Source: Laetmonice hystrix
Lineage: Eukaryota
Direction of reading: 5' to 3'
Assembly (NCBI GenBank): GCA_965235115.1
Contig: OZ249441.1
Span: forward strand, 13,888,001-13,952,000
DNA: 64,000 nt
The translations under genes and the position numbers were made by a program. Shown here piece after piece: positions 3 to 19,792 of the stretch; position 1 is the stretch's first letter, and every line of letters starts with the position of its first letter. The notes below the pieces were generated by a model that ran no database searches, was not told where the DNA came from, and saw only the letters and a program-made list of their open reading frames with translations.

Positions 3-3000
3 CTGGGTGTAAATCACAACGAAGTGCAATGCCACTATATCAAGTTGGAGGAGCAGGTTGAGAATTTGTGGAATATGGATCGCATAGACAGTGAGGTCCA
101 AGGGTTGTCTGTTAATGACAGAAAGGTCCTAGAATTGTGGAATAATGAAACCAGATACGAAGAAGGTCACTATGTCATGCCCATACCATGGAAGGATGGG
201 GAACCCTGTTTACCCGATAATAAGTATGTTGCACTACATCGTTTAAATGGTTTGAAGAGTCGTTTGGACAAGTCCGGTATGTTGGAGAGATATTCCAAGG
301 AAGTCGATAAGTTGTTGGAGGCGGGTTATGCTGAATCGGTTCCTAATGATCGGTCTGACGTCCCTAGCAATTATGTGTGGTATCTCCCGCACCATGGAGT
401 GGTTAGCGAGTCTAAGCCGGGAAAGGTGCGAGTTGTGTTTGATTGTGCGGCTACTAGGTATGGAGTAAGTTTGAACAATCAATGTCTACAGGGCCCAGAC
501 TTAGCTAACAAATTGATCAGTGTGTTATTGAGGTTTCGGCAATACAGGTATGCCATTATGGCTGACGTAGAATGCATGTACATGCAAGTAAAAATCCCAG
601 AGAAGGATAGAGACGCTCTCAGGTTCTTGTGGTATGACAGGGGTGAGGTGCAGGAGTATCGGATGACCTCACACCTATTCGGGGGAGTTTGGTGTGCAAG
701 CAGCAGCACGTACGCGCTTCGGCGCACAGTAGAAGACTTTGTATGTAGTGATCTTGCCGTAGATACAGTTCAGCGTTCCTTCTATGTAGACGACATGCTC
801 AAGTCCGTGCCACAGTACAGCCAAGCATGTGAAGTAATACATGACACTAAGTTAGCGCTTAGTTACGGTGGGTTCAACCTAACAAAATTTGTCGTCAACG
901 ACCCATCCTTATTAGATCAAATAAGGTTGGATGACCGGGCCAAGGAGGTGAAGGAACTGATGCCAGAGATTAAGAGTAAAGTTTTGGGCATTAAATGGGA
1001 TGTCCTAGACGACTGTTTCTACTATGTCAGCAAAGTAGTTAGTGTGGAGTATTCCAATGTCACACGTCGTAGAATATTGAGTGAGGTATCTTCAATGTAT
1101 GACCCGCTGGGTCTTATTGCACCAGTTGTTCATTGTGGGAAGGTATTGTTCCAGGAAGCCACACGTCTTCAATTAGATTGGGACAAATCGGTACCCCCAG
1201 CCCTTGCTGAGAAATGGTTCAATTGGCGAGCTTCGCTGAGTGACCTGGACAAACTGAAGTTTCCTAGATGCTTGATACCAGAACAGTTTGTAGATGGGTC
1301 CATTGAACTCCACCATTTCTGTGACGCAAGTCGAGTCGGTTACGGGGCTTGCTGTTATCTCCGAGTTATCAATCAGTGGGGTGAAATTCATGTACGGCTC
1401 CTAATGAGTAAGGGGCGTCTAGCCCCACTAAAACAAGTGACTATACCCCGGCTTGAGTTATCTGCGGCGGTCGTGGCCACCGAGATTGACTCACTGATCA
1501 GGCGTGATCTAGATGTAGTCATTACGAAGTCCGAGTTTTGGTCTGATAGTCAGATCGTGCTAGCCTACATCAAAAATGAGAACCGACGATACAAGGTATT
1601 TGTTGCCAACCGCGTGTCCATGATACGGCAGCGGTCCACCCCTGACCAATGGCGGTATATCAGTGGCAGTCTAAACCCTGCCGACCTTCTGTCTCGAGGT
1701 AGTACGGTTAGCGAAGTACCGGGTACATGGATTGCTGGACCCGCTTTTCTTTACCAGTACAAATCCCAGTGGCAGAGTAAGGAGACAGAACTTGCGCATC
1801 AGTTAGATGAGGATCCAGAGGTGTGTCATACAACCTCACAATCTATGCCAACCGTGTGTGTTGTCAAACAAGCATCTGAACTCAAGGTTCATCCTCTTGA
1901 AACTCTTGCCCAACACTACTCAAGCTTCTATCGCTTTAAAAAGGCAGTCACTTGGTTAAATAGGGTAAAATCTTACCTACGGGGTAAGAAAATTGTTGAC
2001 GGGCCGATTAAAGTTCCAGAGCTAGAGAATGCTGAGAGCATTATTATCAAATTTGTGCAACGACAAGAATACGCGGAGGAGATAGCGTCCTTAAGTCAGG
2101 CAGGTCAAGTGTCCAAATCTAGTAATTTATGTAAGCTGACACCGTCGCTTGATAATGATCTCTTGGTAGTTGGCGGTCGGCTCACTCATTCAAGTCTACC
2201 GCATCGTGTTAAGCATCCCGTCATATTACCACGTGGGCACAAGGTGTCACGAATGATTGTTTCAGATTATCACTCTGGCGCTCATTTGGGCACAGAGTGG
2301 ACACTCTCAAAGCTCCGTAACAAATACTGGATTGTGGGTGCAAGGAGCCTTATTAAGGGGATTAAACGTCAATGTGTTGTATGCAAACGTCTGTATGCTA
2401 GGCCACTGCTGCAGAAAATGGCAGATCTTCCTCCGGAAAGATGTGTCCCTGGTAGCCCACCTTTCACAAACGTAGGTGTCGACCTGTTCGGACCCTTCTA
2501 TGTCAAGTGGGGCAGGGCGGAAGCAAAACGTTATGGGTGCCTCTACACTTGTTTCACTACGCGCGCCATACATATGGAGAAGCTAGAATCGCTCGAGACT
2601 GACACGTTCATTAACGGGTTTATTCGGTTTGTGGCTCGCAGGGGGTATCCATCTAAGGTCTGGTCGGATAATGGTAGTAACTTGGTAGGCGCGCGTTCTG
2701 AGATTAGTCGAGAGTTACATCGTTTGAGTCGGGACAAAGTAGTGATTGCTGCTCGGCGGCACAATGTTGACTGGGTGTTTAACCCCCCATACGCTTCGCA
2801 TCAGGGTGGTATATGGGAAAGACAAATCCGCACTGTAAGAAAAGTCTTAGTAGCGTTGTTAGTTTCTCAACCTCGCATGAATGACGATGTTGCCCATACA
2901 ATCTTGTGTGAAGTCGAAAATATCGTAAACAGTCGCCCGATCACCAAAGTGAGTGATGATGTTAATGATGGGGATGCCTTAACCCCAAACCACCTTCTTG

Positions 3001-3374
3001 TAATGGTAGGTAATGAGTCTCTCCCATGGACTGTGAATGGTCGTATAGGTGATACATATCGTAAGCGGTGGAAATATGTACAACATGTTGTTAACATGTT
3101 CTGGAAGAGGTGGGTAAAACAATACCTCATTGAGCTTCAGAGGCGGTCTAAATGGCTTGAAGTCCAAAGAAATGTCAAGGTAGGGGATCTTGTACTGGTC
3201 GTAGATGAAAATACCCCACGTGGATTATGGCCTTTAGGTGTCGTCCAAGAGACCAGATATGGCCGAGATGAATTGGTCAGAAGTGCGAAAATTCTTACAA
3301 GGTCGACGACCATGGTTAGGCCAATTACCAAATTAGTTTTGTTGGAAGGTAATGATGAGAGGTATGAAACTTAA
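3..3374 (+). CDS. BEL/Pao LTR retrotransposon Pol polyprotein, 5'-truncated by window edge (RT, RNase H, integrase, DUF5641-like tail)
   Basis: Frame is open from base 3, so the GTG at 24 is not a real start. RT motifs PHHGV..KPGKVRVVFDCA and FYVDDML; RNase H LHHFCDAS..YG, WSDSQIVL, NPADLLSRG; integrase HHCC (YHSGAH..CVVC) and DDE core GVDLFGP / SDNGSNL / GGIWERQIR; C-terminal WKRWVKQYL..QRRSKW typical of BEL/Pao. Confidence 0.97.
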   Translation: MGVNHNEVQCHYIKLEEQVENLWNMDRIDSEVQGLSVNDRKVLELWNNETRYEEGHYVMPIPWKDGEPCLPDNKYVALHRLNGLKSRLDKSGMLERYSKEVDKLLEAGYAESVPNDRSDVPSNYVWYLPHHGVVSESKPGKVRVVFDCAATRYGVSLNNQCLQGPDLANKLISVLLRFRQYRYAIMADVECMYMQVKIPEKDRDALRFLWYDRGEVQEYRMTSHLFGGVWCASSSTYALRRTVEDFVCSDLAVDTVQRSFYVDDMLKSVPQYSQACEVIHDTKLALSYGGFNLTKFVVNDPSLLDQIRLDDRAKEVKELMPEIKSKVLGIKWDVLDDCFYYVSKVVSVEYSNVTRRRILSEVSSMYDPLGLIAPVVHCGKVLFQEATRLQLDWDKSVPPALAEKWFNWRASLSDLDKLKFPRCLIPEQFVDGSIELHHFCDASRVGYGACCYLRVINQWGEIHVRLLMSKGRLAPLKQVTIPRLELSAAVVATEIDSLIRRDLDVVITKSEFWSDSQIVLAYIKNENRRYKVFVANRVSMIRQRSTPDQWRYISGSLNPADLLSRGSTVSEVPGTWIAGPAFLYQYKSQWQSKETELAHQLDEDPEVCHTTSQSMPTVCVVKQASELKVHPLETLAQHYSSFYRFKKAVTWLNRVKSYLRGKKIVDGPIKVPELENAESIIIKFVQRQEYAEEIASLSQAGQVSKSSNLCKLTPSLDNDLLVVGGRLTHSSLPHRVKHPVILPRGHKVSRMIVSDYHSGAHLGTEWTLSKLRNKYWIVGARSLIKGIKRQCVVCKRLYARPLLQKMADLPPERCVPGSPPFTNVGVDLFGPFYVKWGRAEAKRYGCLYTCFTTRAIHMEKLESLETDTFINGFIRFVARRGYPSKVWSDNGSNLVGARSEISRELHRLSRDKVVIAARRHNVDWVFNPPYASHQGGIWERQIRTVRKVLVALLVSQPRMNDDVAHTILCEVENIVNSRPITKVSDDVNDGDALTPNHLLVMVGNESLPWTVNGRIGDTYRKRWKYVQHVVNMFWKRWVKQYLIELQRRSKWLEVQRNVKVGDLVLVVDENTPRGLWPLGVVQETRYGRDELVRSAKILTRSTTMVRPITKLVLLEGNDERYET

Positions 3375-13900: not shown

Positions 13901-16764
13901 AATAAGCTGCTTTTGCCTCAAGCTTATGAGTATATCATATTTAAGGCTTATGGGTAACAAAATAACAAAAATTATATTTGTTCTGGCTCTGTTGAGATCA
14001 TCAAACGTCAATAATTTCTGTGCACATAAAAGTCTGGAGGATGATTGCATGCCTTTGTGAAGTTCGGCAGGTCAAATGGTAGTGCATGGCCATATGCCAT
14101 CCTGCCTGTTTGCCATTGCATTGGATGGAATATCTGCTGTGTATAGCTCAGCCCACTTATACAGAAACACACACGCAACCCCCATCCACATGAACATTCA
14201 ACACGACTGGCGGCTGCATCTACAAGTATAACCCATGTTGGCCATACACAAGCACTGCCATACCCTTGAGATATGGTGACGTAGGAGATCGGTAATAGAA
14301 AATTCCCCTGCAACCTACAGCCGTACCCGGCGGTACAGACAGACTCTGCCCTCGTGGTCTCCCATCCCGTCGGAGCCGTTTCTGTCTGAAACATGACGTG
14401 CCACCAAGACGTGCTCGTTCCCTTCATCTCGCGCACTGCTTGTCTAACAATCGAACCCGGAGGCTTCGGCTGGTTCGTCCTTGACAGTGTCAGATTATGT
14501 AGGCATACAACAATCAATCAGTACGTGCCATCCAATTCCATTTTTGTGCTTCGTTGACCCCCCCCCCCCCCACCGGGTTGGTGTGGAAAGGGAGTGAGCG
14601 CTCGTTGGCACTAGAAACATTATGTGATTGTATATCTTATTATATGTGATTGTATATCTTATTTCACATGACTGGGTGTCATATCATAGCATCATTACAT
14701 TAGAGGATACTATTTGTACGTGTAACTATTATTTATAGCCATCGATATCTGCAAACGACCACTATCAGTACAATAGATATGGCATCAATTTCATTTAAAT
14801 TGCATGTGAGGTTACCACATTTTCCACGGACAATACGTTCCATGCCGTTTAATTTGGTATAAGCGATGATAATTGTTCAGAATTATTCCCACAAATAACA
14901 AGATTGAGAACATCAGGAACATTGTAATTTCCTTGGATTTACATGGTTTGAAGCAGAACTTGTTACGTTCAAGTCAGACTATACTGCATATCAGATGTCT
15001 TCCTGACGGCCGTCCTACTTATACCTGCTGGTGTAACCCACCCCCCTGTGGTATCAGGTATATACTTACCTGTCCCTCTGGTGTCACGGATACTATACTT
15101 GCCGAACGGATGTGATCTCGGCGAGTGTGTTATAGAAATGGCTATGGTCAGAATGACGGCCCGATGTATGAGGGCCAGCAAATGGTCGTCTCTGTCAGCA
15201 GGAAGCCACCCCGTGCGTCGTCAGGCGGCTCGCCGGCTTAGTTCCCATTCGATATACCCCGCCTCCGTCTTTATATACAAAACACAGCTCGCACAGGTGT
15301 TCTGCCGGAAATACTATCTAAAAGGTGGAAGCTGTCGAATGAAGCAAATAAAGTGCTGACACATTCTCTGTATGGACACATAGCGCGGCCAGTCATGTTT
15401 TTGGTTCCCGTAAAATGATCGCCTCCTATAGGACCGACGTCTATAACGATAGAAACCGAAATATGCACATGAATGTGTTGCTAGGTATAGTATGCATTCA
15501 TGTAAGTAGGCCTAGGCCTACATGACTGTATAGTATGTATAGGCTTACATATTCCTTTACGTGGTAAATAAATAGCTAAATTTAAAAAATGAAGTCGAGT
15601 ACATTTCCTGAAAATACGGTTACACAGATATATAGAAGGTCTAATATTGATCAAGGAAGGTTCATTTACACAAGATAATGCGCAAATGTTTTGATCACCA
15701 CGGATTCAGTGACATTGCTTATTTGGACTCCTCTCATCTCTGCCTCGGCGCCTGGTTCTCCTTCATCATACGGCGGCGCAAACGACGCCACATGACAACT
15801 CCTTCAATATGGTCACAAACCTCGGACGAGAGCCGCACTCACTGGCGTCGTCAACTTCGGTGGCGCCAGATATGTAGTAATGACCACCACCCAACGCTCC
15901 TTGAGGCTCCGACTCGTATCAACTTCCAAGTCATTGGTGCACATTTCCAGTAATCAATGTATTTGTAGCAGTAACTTTCCCTTCAGGTATAAACTTTATA
16001 GCGTTACATGACATACTCTTGCACCTCTTCGAGGAGGATTCATATCCTCCTCGAATTACATATACTGCCGCCGGACCGTCATTATCACCAGTGGAAGCAA
16101 TAAAACCAGGAGTAAAGAAACTCGAGAGAATTTTTTATCGGTTACAATCAATTATCTCTGCCTTCCTGTGGTAATTCGATTTTTAAATGAGGTGTGCACG
16201 GTATATTTATACAAAGGCAAACGCGAGGTAAATATAGGGATCCTAGCGGATGATAATAATGATTTTAATGAGGTGACTGTTTAAGATAAAAACAGCCAGC
16301 CTACTCTGTCTATACATGTTCCGTTCAGGGGGATCCCGCCTACAGGGAATGAGTTATTTTTATAGCCGAATTTGCGCTTATACAAAACGATATATCAATT
16401 CGTATAGGCCGTACGCAGGGGAGGGGGGGGGGGTCCGGGGTGTCTGTAACACCCCCCTTCCCACCAAAGTCGATTGGGCTTGCATTATAAGGTAATTTTC
16501 CGGCATGCCCCCGGACCCCCCTGGCATGACTATACCCCCAGAGCGTATTACCCCCCCCCCCCCACTCAAAAAACCTGCGCACCTGAGTTTGCATATCATC
16601 CGATGTGTTTTTTTTACATACCTGTTATTAGAAATAGTTTTTTTAAACTTCTTTCGGCACAAAGTCTAGCTCCAATTATATCGCCGAAGTATAAAGTAAG
16701 CAAGGGTTTGCTTTGGGAAACAATAAATGAATAATATTCTATACTTTTCAGGGCGCCAGGTCCG

Positions 16765-18730
16765 ATGCACACAACCATGCTACACCAAGTAGTGCTTGCC
16801 ACCTTCCTAGTGGTCGTATCTTCAGCGCCGCTCACTCCTCTTAAAGCCCCGGACGATGTCGGGAAGTCAGTGGCACTCCGAAGTGTGTATTAATTATTAT
16901 AATGCTAAACGGTAAAAAGGTGTCCCACGAGGGTTAAGGTGGAAACGAAGGAAAAACCTGCCCCTCACAGGGACTGAGAAGTCATTACATATATACAACA
17001 GATTTGAAATGTGAACACCTTCGTTTGTATTATTTTTGTTCATACTGAAACAATAAATTAATGAACACAACAGGGATGAGACTTTCCGCCGATCGGACGA
17101 CTTGCGTCGTTTTGTCGGTTTCTATAGCGGCCTATTAATATCTGACCCTCGTTTTCATCATCGCTCTGTCTCATCAGTGTTTATAATTAAATATATTTTT
17201 CAGATAAACGTTCAGAGGAAGCTATTATCTATGGCAACCACCAAAACATGGCCCGCATCAAAAAAGGAGATCCGCACCCAAGACCGTTCCAATTGACCCC
17301 ACAAAGTTCCGAGCAAGACATTGACGATGATACTGTGAAACCAGCCGGTTCTGCTCCAGACGAAGTCAGCCTCCCGGTGCCCAAAGAACCAGTCAGCGAA
17401 CAGCAAGAGGACGACGTGGTGGCTGGCATTAATAACTTGGTCTCACCTCATGACGACAAAACCCCCGACCAGGACATGACGGAAGACGAGGAGAAAGAGA
17501 TTGAAAAGCTTTTGCAGCCGGATGACGCAGATAACATTGACGTCGAGGAGAAGAATCTAGAGCGTCTACTCGAGGCGGAGCAAAGCAGTGAGAAAATTGA
17601 TGAGGAAACTTTAAATGAACTCAGAAACGAAGAATTCAGTGTGGACAATCCAGGCACTGTAGTCGACGAGTACCCGAATGATGACGATGAGTCGTCGGGA
17701 GACGGGGAACTTGGGCTTCCTGAGAATGATATTTTTAGAGGCAAGTATAATATATATAGAGAGAGCTAAACGTTTTTAAGCAGAAATGCTGGTAGATTTA
17801 TAATTAGTCTATAATTTATTTATTTTGTTATGAACAGGTGATTATTACGACGATGATGGGTACGTCGACGAGTCCTATCCAGATTTTACCGGTACTTATG
17901 ATGGGCAACAACAGTCTGGACTCCTTAAGGCGTTTCGAGAAAAGAGAAGCACGGCCAAGAACAAAAAGGCACGCAGCATACCCAAAATTATCAACGCGGA
18001 AGACATGAGCATGATGAGCGATGTTACTGGAAAACTAGGAGGTCGAGTGAAACGCGACCTGGCGCTCTCCCCCGAGGAACTTCAAGCGTTCCTCGACAGT
18101 GAATACGGCGGCAATGATGAACCATATGATGACATTGACAGGAGGACTGCTCCCTCTGAAAACTGGTCCAGCGATGACATGGAGGACTTGCTAAAAGACG
18201 AAATAGCACGGTACGATATCGACCCCAGGTCTTACGACATGCCGGATTATATGCCGGACGAGAGCGAGGGAGCTCCGGTGGAATACGGCAACCAGGAGGC
18301 AGACCTTGCTCTCCTCAGGTACCTGTACGGCGAGGGCGGCGACGGGCCCGTGCTTGATTACCCTAATGAGGTGGAGGAGACTTGGGAGGACCTAGGGCCA
18401 GCGCAAGAGATCCGCTACGAACCTCCATTCTATAATCCCGAGCCTGAATCTGAGCCGCCCAGGAAAAGGCAGTATATGAGCTTTGTGCCTGGTGTACGTA
18501 AAAGGGAACCGGACTTTTACCCCTACCAGTACGGACCGGATAGTCGGTGGGGGGCCTTTGTTCTACAGCCCGAGCTGGAGAAACGAAGCGAAGTCAAGGA
18601 GTACGAGAAACTGTTCGAGTTGGCGCAGGCACTAAACGGGCCTGAATCGGAGACAGACATGGAACAACGACGAGAGAGTAATTCCCCCCAGGAGGAAGAA
18701 TCTGATTACTGGACGGAGAGGAGAAAATAA
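16765..18730 (+). CDS. Secreted acidic prohormone / neuropeptide precursor, 515 aa, granin-like, resembling NVP-like/prohormone-2
   Basis: Exons 16765-16882, 17204-17740, 17838-18730 total 1548 nt with matching phases (1,1). Signal-peptide-like MHTTMLHQVVLATFLVVVSS|APL; many D/E residues; basic cleavage sites NKR, IKK, EKR, VKR, RKR x2, EKR, QRR. Confidence 0.85.
17741..17837 (+). other. GC-AG intron in the prohormone gene
   Basis: AG|GCAAGT donor and AACAG| acceptor; joins two acidic open frames in phase; without splicing the frame stops at 17769. Confidence 0.8.
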
Positions 18731-19597
18731 GAGATCGACGGGAATGAGACTTCGCCCCAAATCTAACTGGTAGGTTGGCGACTCCAGTTTGAAGATGGTG
18801 TCGAGGGAGTACTTTTGGAAAAATGTCGAGGATGTCGATTTAAACTAAACTGCTGTCGTGAAACCTTTCTTTAAAGAAAATGTTTTTTTTTCATAAATCT
18901 TGTGTTCATCAAAACAGTCGTGTGTTGCAGGATTCACCGCCCACGTTGCCATTCCACGTGAGCCACCTAGCGAAACAAGCTCTCGACAACCGGACGTGCC
19001 CATCTCTTCATCACCAATGGGAATCTATGACATTGGCCTATCGCACGCAGCTCACGGCACATCTTTGTCACAATGCACGAACGAACTTAAAGTTTTCTTT
19101 TTCGCGAGTTATTTTGATATGTTAACATATGTAAGGCATGATAAATCACCCGATTAATGTGAACCCGGCCACAAAGAGTATGTTAGGGAGTGTTTATAAA
19201 TGCCAGATATTTCAAAAACCGAATGGAAATTATTAAAAAGCATATAAGAAGACAGTGGGTATAACATCGTCATAATGCTGCGCCGCGGGCACGGCGAATA
19301 TTATCTATAGGTTCGGACCTACTGTATTTCCTCCTCGAGATACAAATAGAACTCAGTTATGTTGCAAATGCAAGGCTGTGTATTATTTTTCGAAGCATTG
19401 CCTATACTTAGCCAACAGTTACCTGCCTATCATTGTGAACCTGCCAGGGACGTTGTTCGGTGTGAAGGAGTCAGTTAAAGATTATAATTATAAGCATTAC
19501 CTTTACCATTACCTTCGTGATGCATGACCAGCGTCCGTGATTCAGTTATAAAGACAGTTTACTGATGCAGGTCGCTGATGTACTATACTGTATGTGA

Positions 19598-19792
19598 NNN
19601 NNNNNNNNNNNNNNNNNNNNNNNNNNNNNNNNNNNNNNNNNNNNNNNNNNNNNNNNNNNNNNNNNNNNNNNNNNNNNNNNNNNNNNNNNNNNNNNNNNNN
19701 NNNNNNNNNNNNNNNNNNNNNNNNNNNNNNNNNNNNNNNNNNNNNNNNNNNNNNNNNNNNNNNNNNNNNNNNNNNNNNNNNNNNNNNNNNNN
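19598..19792. other. Assembly gap (195 N)
   Basis: Run of N. Confidence 1.

What the first reader, a model, noticed from the sequence alone, without database searches (positions are those of the whole stretch)
16765..18730. Spliced 515-aa granin-like prohormone resembling insect NVP-like/prohormone-2
Seen: three phase-matched exons give a signal peptide, a strongly acidic body and many basic sites flanking short islands: SEEAIIYGNHQNMARI (17212-17259), DLALSPEELQAFLDSEY, QYMSFVPGV (18470-18496, between RKR and RKR), EPDFYPYQYGPDSRWGAFVLQPELE and SEVKEYEKLFELAQALNG. No G-K/R amidation site is evident. Recalled, not computed: KR-SEEAIIYGNHQN and KR-DLALSPEEL resemble the KR-AQEMLMFGNQQN and KR-ELDIDPED motifs of honey-bee prohormone-2, in the same order. 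Inference: a possibly uncharacterised member of this family with novel peptides. The ORF track splits it into two fragments and misses the signal exon.
Basis: partly seen in the sequence, partly recalled or inferred. Interest (0 to 1): 0.75.

Follow-up and report, generated by a model that had tools for sequence, protein, structure and literature searches.

The report
Annelid GNXQN / prohormone-2 neuropeptide precursor gene
This is a real three-exon worm gene for a secreted, acidic neuropeptide precursor, but it belongs to the GNXQN/prohormone-2 family already described in annelids, molluscs and insects, so it is an ordinary new member rather than a new kind of hormone.

Summary
Exons 16765-16882, 17204-17740 and 17838-18730 join in frame, with both introns in phase 1, to give a 515-aa protein. 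It has a hydrophobic N-terminus, pI 4.2, no cysteine, eleven di- or multibasic sites and no Gly-basic amidation site.

A profile of exon 3 alone retrieved 35 proteins from 1.84 billion. The full-length hits, except two (a nemertean protein and P0048), also carry KR-xxExx[FY]GN[HQ]QN near the N-terminus, a motif that was not in the query. Two of them contain the exact peptide AAEQVIFGNHQNNARV, which was detected by mass spectrometry in Platynereis and defines the published "GNXQN" precursor (Conzelmann 2013). De Oliveira 2019 links GNXQN to insect prohormone-2 (also called NVP-like or the baratin precursor).

A related annelid contig has the same three coding exons and the same intron phases. 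Intron 2 of the window uses a GC donor (GAG|GCAAGT).

I could not test transcription, processing or the receptor. The link to insects rests on published clustering and on my own reading of four motifs that occur in the same order, not on a statistical test.

Verdict: new member of a known family, low interest.

The parts
16765..16882 (+). Coding exon 1. It holds the start codon (a second ATG at 16777 is an alternative start), a signal peptide of about 20 residues (core VVLATFLVVV, likely cut VSS|APL), and the start of a short propeptide. It ends 1 nt into a codon, before a GT donor.
   Evidence: The S/A-AP-L/V motif after the hydrophobic core is shared with L001 and with P0004, P0007, P0009, P0015, P0027 and P0032.
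16883..17203 (+). Intron 1, GT..AG, phase 1.
   Evidence: L001 has an intron with the same phase at the same place.
17204..17740 (+). Coding exon 2. It encodes the NKR site, the GNXQN peptide, a KK site, then a long acidic spacer (residues 61-218).
   Evidence: The first 25 residues are 76% identical to P0021, and the L001 ORF 3316..4035 is 32% identical across the whole exon.
17212..17259 (+). Predicted 16-residue non-amidated peptide SEEAIIYGNHQNMARI (residues 43-58), flanked by KR and KK. This is the name-giving GNXQN peptide.
   Evidence: It aligns residue for residue with AAEQVIFGNHQNNARV, which was MS-detected in Platynereis and is present verbatim in P0004 and P0047. It also aligns with oyster AQEVMMFGNQQNKPRI, which was MS-detected. 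See the alignment.
17741..17837 (+). Intron 2, GC..AG (donor GAG|GCAAGT), phase 1, 97 nt.
   Evidence: The L001 intron at the same place and phase uses GT.
17838..18730 (+). Coding exon 3, carrying the Tyr/Asp-rich stretch, the REKR, KK, RVKR, RR, RKR, RKR, KR and RR sites, the terminal RRK, and the TAA stop at 18728-18730.
   Evidence: It matches P0001-P0003 at E 5e-101 to 1e-49. Its profile finds 35 family members. BLASTP against P0047 gives 1e-23.
18044..18106 (+). RVKR site followed by DLALSPEELQAFLDSEY (residues 288-308).
   Evidence: R.KR-DL is invariant in A1 and nearly so in A2. Insect precursors show R.KR-[DE]L.[LI]DPEDV at the matching place.
18470..18496 (+). Predicted nonapeptide QYMSFVPGV between RKR and RKR (residues 430-438).
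   Evidence: KRQ[YM][LM]S.[VL]PG.[RK]KR is the best-conserved block of the family. I found no MS record of it.
18506..18580 (+). Predicted peptide EPDFYPYQYGPDSRWGAFVLQPELE (residues 442-466), ending before KR.
   Evidence: FYP...RWGAF is conserved across the hits. The oyster homologue SSYFYPYSEEPETHFGAFVPEK was MS-detected. The RWG[AG]F core resembles insect baratin (DNSQWGGFA) and Tribolium GRWGGFA.
18587..18667 (+). Predicted peptide SEVKEYEKLFELAQALNGPESETDMEQ (residues 469-495).
   Evidence: Y..L..LA.AL is conserved. The oyster homologue EYLDTYSRLVQLARELSK... was MS-detected. Insect precursors end with ..TLAQLL...
18674..18727 (+). C-terminal peptide ESNSPQEEESDYWTE followed by RRK.
   Evidence: The C-terminal peptide of the Platynereis precursor (DELEAQRFYAEDFPE, followed by KK) was MS-detected. 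Most family members end in a basic K/KK.

Best explanation
The locus is the single-copy orthologue, in this annelid genome, of the GNXQN / prohormone-2 proneuropeptide gene. Three coding exons give a roughly 515-aa preproprotein.

Inferred mechanism, from what is established for proneuropeptides: the signal peptide takes it into the secretory pathway, and in dense-core vesicles of neurosecretory cells prohormone convertases cut at the conserved basic sites. These sites are NKR, KK, REKR, RVKR, RKR, RKR, KR and RR. Carboxypeptidase then trims the basic residues.

This would release a set of non-amidated peptides: the 16-mer SEEAIIYGNHQNMARI, a DL...PEEL peptide, the 9-mer QYMSFVPGV, a FYPY...RWGAFV peptide, a Y..L..LAQAL peptide and a C-terminal peptide. 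The acidic spacer would be released as by-products.

Shown here: the gene structure, the family membership and the conservation of the sites. Inferred: expression, actual cleavage and signalling function. The receptor is unknown for the whole family.
For: The in-frame three-exon model holds. The same exon/intron plan and phases occur in a related annelid contig.

A profile of exon 3 alone finds 35 proteins at E<=1e-3 among 1.84 billion. All those inspected share the same ordered blocks. The full-length hits P0004, P0047, P0009, P0015, P0021, P0027 (Mytilus) and P0032 (Patella) also carry KR..E..[FY]G[ND][HQ]QN at residues 27-49, a motif absent from the query.

P0004 and P0047 contain verbatim the MS-verified Platynereis GNXQN peptide. 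BLASTP gives 2e-10 for exon 2 and 1e-23 for exon 3.

Literature:
- PMC3890597 defines GNXQN in annelids and molluscs with MS support.
- PMC6425005 and PMC8557429 equate it with prohormone-2.
- PMC8398477 lists MS peptides of the oyster precursor.
- PMC5913682 reports GNXQN expression in Platynereis neurosecretory cells together with PC2.

No other copy lies in the window.
Against: There is no transcript, junction read or peptide evidence for this species. The signal peptide was judged only from hydrophobicity and a conserved motif, not with SignalP. Intron 2 needs a rare GC donor. No Pfam model exists for the family, so membership rests on pairwise and profile similarity plus the literature. 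Two word-indexed searches found only three or four relatives, which reflects that tool's candidate step.
Confidence: 0.92

Rival explanations
1. It is a granin-like helper protein. The acidic protein would serve mainly in dense-core granule formation or sorting, or as a convertase chaperone in the way 7B2 and proSAAS do. The conserved islands would then be interaction motifs rather than released signalling peptides.
For: The composition is very acidic, with pI 4.2 and no Cys. No receptor is known for any peptide of the family (PMC8557429). Expression in Platynereis neurosecretory cells is broad. ProSAAS appears among the distant feature look-alikes.
Against: No granin, 7B2 or proSAAS domain is found. 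The conserved islands are exactly bounded by conserved dibasic sites. Their homologues are recovered as discrete peptides by MS in Platynereis and oyster. Insect baratin, from the homologous precursor, is reported as neurostimulating (PMC4237046 and PMC13478068).
Confidence: 0.06
2. The locus is a non-functional or mis-modelled gene. The GC-donor junction would be wrong, or the gene would be a decaying copy, so that no 515-aa protein is made.
For: The GC donor is unusual, and other in-frame junctions exist. There are no expression data. A retrotransposon lies 13 kb upstream.
Against: All three exons have open frames, with conserved motifs and basic sites intact. The junction positions and phases match L001. 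GAG|GCAAGT is the standard form of GC donors (established knowledge). Any of the alternative junctions would alter only the variable spacer.
Confidence: 0.03
3. The annelid/mollusc GNXQN family and insect prohormone-2 are not homologous, and the shared GNxQN motif is convergent.
For: The oyster paper states that bee prohormone-2 shows only limited similarity and no conserved cleavage sites. No protein among the 35 profile hits could be identified as arthropod, though only three of them carried a source name. Feature similarity to the arthropod 'prohormone-2-like' cluster is 0.80-0.87, below the 0.9 reliability mark.
Against: Published clustering links the two through molluscs (PMC6425005). In Veenstra's printed alignment, non-bee insects show four islands in the same order as the window protein: KR..E..[FY]GNQQN, R.KR-[DE]L..PE[DE], RWG[GA]F, and LAQ[AL]L.
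Confidence: 0.15

Closest known systems
Platynereis dumerilii GNXQN proneuropeptide (GenBank KF515928 / AHB62367; Conzelmann et al. 2013, PMC3890597)
   Same: The architecture is the same from end to end: signal peptide ending in S-APL, a KR-flanked 16-mer with GNHQN followed by KK, an acidic spacer, R.KR, NAEDM, R.KR-DL, DLAL..YLY, W.D.GPA, KRQY[LM]SFVPG.RKR, FYPY.YGPD.RW.A, EKR..Y..L..LA.AL, and a basic C-terminus. None of the peptides is amidated.
   Different: Identity to nereidid relatives over exon 3 is only about 35%. The window clade (window, P0001, L001, L002) has its own extra conserved pieces: DRR..PSE.W, DPRSYD, ALNGPE and a DYW..RRK tail. The spacer is unalignable.
Crassostrea gigas Cragi-GNQQN precursor (PMC8398477) and other mollusc GNQQN precursors (Mytilus P0027, Patella P0032)
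   Same: The block order and the basic sites are the same. Oyster MS peptides correspond to the window's GNXQN 16-mer, to the peptide starting right after KK, to the FYP...GAFV peptide and to the Y..L..LA..L peptide.
   Different: Molluscs have GNQQN rather than GNHQN. The middle region is shorter. The oyster paper reports a large amidated peptide in bivalve precursors, whereas the window protein has no amidation site.
Insect prohormone-2 = NVP-like = baratin precursor (Hummon 2006; Veenstra 2014, PMC4237046; PMC12604039)
   Same: Both have a signal peptide, KR-AQE..[LM]FGNQQN near the N-terminus, R.KR-[DE]L.[LI]DPEDV in the middle, then an RWGGF/QWGGF (baratin) peptide, then ..LAQLL.. near the C-terminus. 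This is the order seen in the window at residues 41, 288, 455 and 474.
   Different: Similarity outside these islands is too weak for my searches to pick up. Insects have KRFMVSRKR after the baratin peptide and lack KRQYMSFVPG.RKR before it. NVPIYQEPRF itself has no counterpart in the window protein. Homology was not statistically tested here.
Vertebrate granins, 7B2 and proSAAS
   Same: All are acidic, Cys-poor secretory-pathway proteins with dibasic sites.
   Different: No sequence or domain match was found. The resemblance is in composition only.

Membership tests
GNXQN / prohormone-2 proneuropeptide family | N-terminal signal peptide | tested here: met
   The only hydrophobic segment is at residues 8-19. 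It is followed by a small-residue site, SS|APL, that is conserved in relatives. This is a heuristic judgement; SignalP was not available.
GNXQN / prohormone-2 proneuropeptide family | A GN[QHR]QN motif towards the N-terminus (De Oliveira 2019), within a peptide bounded by basic sites | tested here: met
   KR-SEEAIIYGNHQNMARI-KK lies at residues 41-60. The strict motif arose in 0 of 20000 shuffles. It aligns with the motif in P0004, P0047, P0015, P0021, P0027 and P0032.
GNXQN / prohormone-2 proneuropeptide family | Sequence similarity of the rest of the precursor to established members | tested here: met
   The exon-3 profile hits P0004 at 2.6e-27. P0004 carries the exact MS-verified Platynereis peptide. 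The profile also hits Mytilus and Patella proteins. BLASTP against P0047 gives 1e-23.
GNXQN / prohormone-2 proneuropeptide family | Conserved basic cleavage sites bounding the conserved islands | tested here: met
   KR/KK around the 16-mer, R.KR-DL, KR-Q...PG.-RKR and EKR are all aligned across annelids and molluscs.
GNXQN / prohormone-2 proneuropeptide family | Neural or neurosecretory expression, and release of the peptides | not testable with these tools
   This is known only for relatives: MS in Platynereis and oyster and single-cell data in Platynereis.
Insect prohormone-2 / NVP-like / baratin precursor (as the same family) | Detectable homology to insect precursors beyond the GNxQN motif | tested here: inconclusive
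   Four islands in the same order are seen by eye against Veenstra's printed alignment. No insect sequence was available as a tool object, so no statistic was obtained. No arthropod was recognised among the profile hits. Atlas scores are 0.80-0.87.
Granins (chromogranin/secretogranin) | Granin domain or signature motifs | tested here: not met
   A Pfam scan of both large exons at E<=10 gives no granin, 7B2 or proSAAS match, only a sub-threshold DUF7438.

The most novel reading that the evidence does not exclude
The whole multi-peptide layout, and not just the GNxQN motif, may date back to the protostome ancestor. On this reading the annelid FYPY...RWGAFV peptide (18506-18580) is the counterpart of insect baratin (DNSQWGGFA / GRWGGFA), the DL..PEEL peptide matches the insect [DE]L..DPEDV peptide, and the ..LAQAL peptide matches insect ..LAQLL. 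The C-terminal blocks would then be the more deeply conserved, and perhaps the more important, products. They persist in a nemertean protein and in P0048 (unnamed), both of which have lost GNxQN. The papers I read credit only the GNxQN region as shared with insects.
Probability: 0.5. Interest if true: 0.35.

Novelty: new member of a known kind. Interest (0 to 1): 0.15.

Why it matters
It adds one more annelid orthologue, with a resolved gene structure (three coding exons, two phase-1 introns, one GC donor), to an orphan but widespread protostome neuropeptide family. Its practical value is in annotation. ORF-based gene calling splits the gene, and public pipelines mislabel family members: Patella's as 'CWC22 homolog' and a Mytilus one as 'ARID4B'. 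The order-preserving comparison with insect baratin precursors gives a modest lead for choosing which peptides to use in receptor deorphanisation.

Tried and rejected
- Pfam and PDB sequence searches of both large exons found nothing usable.
- The word-indexed protein search with exon 3, with its four-sequence alignment and with the eight-sequence full-length alignment gave only three or four relatives. Acid-rich words swamped the candidate step.
- The Atlas feature search of exon 2 returned only bacterial low-complexity look-alikes.
- Atlas searches of exon 3 and of P0015 put arthropod 'prohormone-2-like' clusters at ranks 2-3, but below the 0.9 reliability mark, so I treat them as leads only.
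- I tried to obtain an insect precursor as text from the supplements of PMC6425005 and PMC12604039 and failed. Veenstra's figure gave the sequences only as a printed alignment, which I compared by eye rather than retyping.
- I looked for an MS record of the QYMSFVPGV homologue in the oyster tables and found none.
- The P0001 contig could not be fetched because the file was too large.
- I did not run structure prediction, because the protein is a low-complexity precursor and a fold would not bear on the question.
- I considered granin, 7B2 and proSAAS membership and rejected it.

Full report
**The observation**

Joining 16765-16882, 17204-17740 and 17838-18730 gives 1548 nt in frame and a 515-aa protein that ends at a TAA stop. 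Intron 1 is GT..AG. Intron 2 is GC..AG, with the donor GAG|GCAAGT, the usual form of the rare GC class. Both introns are phase 1. Other in-frame donor/acceptor pairs exist, but they have poorer consensus and would change only the variable spacer.

The protein has a single hydrophobic segment, at residues 8-19, followed by SS|APL. It has 125 Asp+Glu, pI 4.2 and no Cys. It has eleven di- or multibasic sites and no Gly-basic amidation site. The quoted peptide coordinates are exact. The mechanical ORF list does split the gene. The gene is single-copy in the window.

**What it is**

Notes from earlier work on this genome call it a marine annelid. Exon 3 alone matched three unnamed ORFs at 71%, 45% and 48% identity.

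One of them lies on a 5.4-Mb contig that I could read (L001). That contig holds an exon-2 homologue starting KRSEEAIIFGNHQNFARVKKANPHP, and a signal-peptide exon upstream. The two introns sit at the same places and in the same phase 1, both with GT donors. This is the main support for the splice model, because no RNA data were available.

A profile of the four exon-3 sequences (A1) was scored against 1.84 billion representative proteins. It gave 35 hits at E<=1e-3 and 19 at E<=1e-10. Every hit I inspected shows the same ordered blocks:
- R.KR-DL
- KRQ[YM][LM]S.[VL]PG.[RK]KR
- FYP...RWGAF
- EKR...Y..L..LA.AL

The full-length hits are P0004, P0047, P0009, P0015 and P0021, plus Mytilus P0027 and Patella P0032. 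They also carry KR..E..[FY]G[ND][HQ]QN at residues 27-49, followed by KK (P0007 has the same peptide one residue shorter). That motif lies in the window's exon 2 and was not part of the query, so it is independent confirmation. Exon 2 against P0021 gives 19 of 25 identities (E 2e-10). Exon 3 against P0047 gives E 1e-23.

**Comparison with the literature**

Conzelmann et al. 2013 (PMC3890597) described a "GNXQN" proneuropeptide in Platynereis, Capitella, Lottia, Crassostrea and Mytilus. The printed Platynereis sequence has the same layout from end to end. Two of its peptides were found by mass spectrometry: AAEQVIFGNHQNNARV and DELEAQRFYAEDFPE. P0004 and P0047 contain that 16-mer verbatim.

De Oliveira et al. 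2019 (PMC6425005) clustered GNXQN with insect prohormone-2 through a shared GN[QHR]QN region. Thiel et al. 2021 (PMC8557429) list "prohormone 2/GNxQN" in nemerteans and brachiopods, with MS confirmation in a nemertean.

The oyster study (PMC8398477) detected several peptides by MS:
- AQEVMMFGNQQNKPRI
- SDPEVPALPDL..., which starts right after KK, as GDPHP... does in the window
- SSYFYPYSEEPETHFGAFVPEK
- EYLDTYSRLVQLARELSK...

These correspond to the window's GNXQN 16-mer, the start of its spacer, its FYPY...RWGAFV peptide and its SEVKEYEKLFELAQAL... peptide.

In Platynereis, GNXQN is expressed in apical neurosecretory cells together with PC2. The exception is QYMSFVPGV, for which I found no MS record.

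**How it most likely works**

Shown here: gene structure, family membership, and conservation of the basic sites that bound each conserved island.

Inferred from general proneuropeptide biology: entry into the secretory pathway through the signal peptide, cleavage by prohormone convertases at the basic sites, carboxypeptidase trimming, and release of several non-amidated peptides.

No receptor is known for the family, so the downstream signalling is unknown.

**The insect link**

Veenstra 2014 (PMC4237046) prints an alignment of "baratin precursors", which are the NVPIYQEPRF / NVP-like / prohormone-2 precursors. It shows:
- in termite, cockroach, locust, stick insect and beetle, R.KR-DL.[LV]DPEDV
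- then a [RQ]WGGF peptide (baratin, DNSQWGGFA; Tribolium GRWGGFA)
- then ..TLAQLL.. near the end

The window protein has RVKR-DLALSPEEL..SRWGAFV.. and ..ELAQAL.. in that same order.

This comparison is by eye. I had no insect sequence as a tool object, no arthropod was recognisable among the profile hits, and Atlas similarity to the arthropod "prohormone-2-like" cluster is only 0.80-0.87. The oyster authors found only limited similarity to the bee protein. Apis is visibly the most divergent insect in Veenstra's alignment, which may explain their finding.

**Rivals**

- A granin- or chaperone-type role cannot be excluded for the acidic spacer. No granin, 7B2 or proSAAS domain is present, and homologous islands are recovered as discrete peptides by MS.
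- A dead or mis-modelled gene is unlikely, given intact frames, motifs and conserved intron positions.

**Verdict**

This is a new member of a known kind and of low interest. A modest residual lead is that the C-terminal peptides, including a baratin-like one, may be the deeply conserved part of the precursor.

Noticed in passing
window 24-3374 (+): A 1116-aa open frame carries Pao retrotransposon peptidase, the integrase zinc-binding domain and DUF5641. This is a BEL/Pao retrotransposon pol that runs to the window edge.
   Followed up: partly
window 16740-16751; L001 2001-2011: A pyrimidine tract plus CAG sits 13 nt upstream of the ATG in the window (ctatacttttcag|GG) and about 36 nt upstream in the relative (tgtttttcag|AA). 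This suggests a further non-coding 5' exon in both species. A TATAAA at 16690 is immediately followed by GTAAGC, which looks like a donor.
   Followed up: no
P0022/P0036/P0037 (Tubulanus polymorphus XP_074654518 and isoforms); P0048: These family members keep every C-terminal block but have no GNxQN motif at the N-terminal position. The C-terminal peptides are therefore more widely conserved than the peptide that names the family.
   Followed up: partly
P0032 (Patella vulgata XP_050394176.2); P0039 (Mytilus edulis CAG2225485.1): Public names for these clear GNQQN precursors are 'pre-mRNA-splicing factor CWC22 homolog' and 'ARID4B'. These are probably artefacts of acid-rich low-complexity matches. 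Most other members are labelled 'uncharacterized'.
   Followed up: no
window 18506-18580 compared with insect baratin: The core ..SRWGAFV.. of the penultimate large peptide resembles cockroach baratin DNSQWGGFA and Tribolium/Zophobas GRWGGFA, and it occupies the same relative position in the precursor. The papers I read do not state this correspondence.
   Followed up: partly
window 19598-19792: A run of 195 N lies about 870 nt downstream of the stop codon. The only poly(A)-signal-like hexamer between the stop and this run is ATTAAA at 19232. I left the N run as it is.
   Followed up: no
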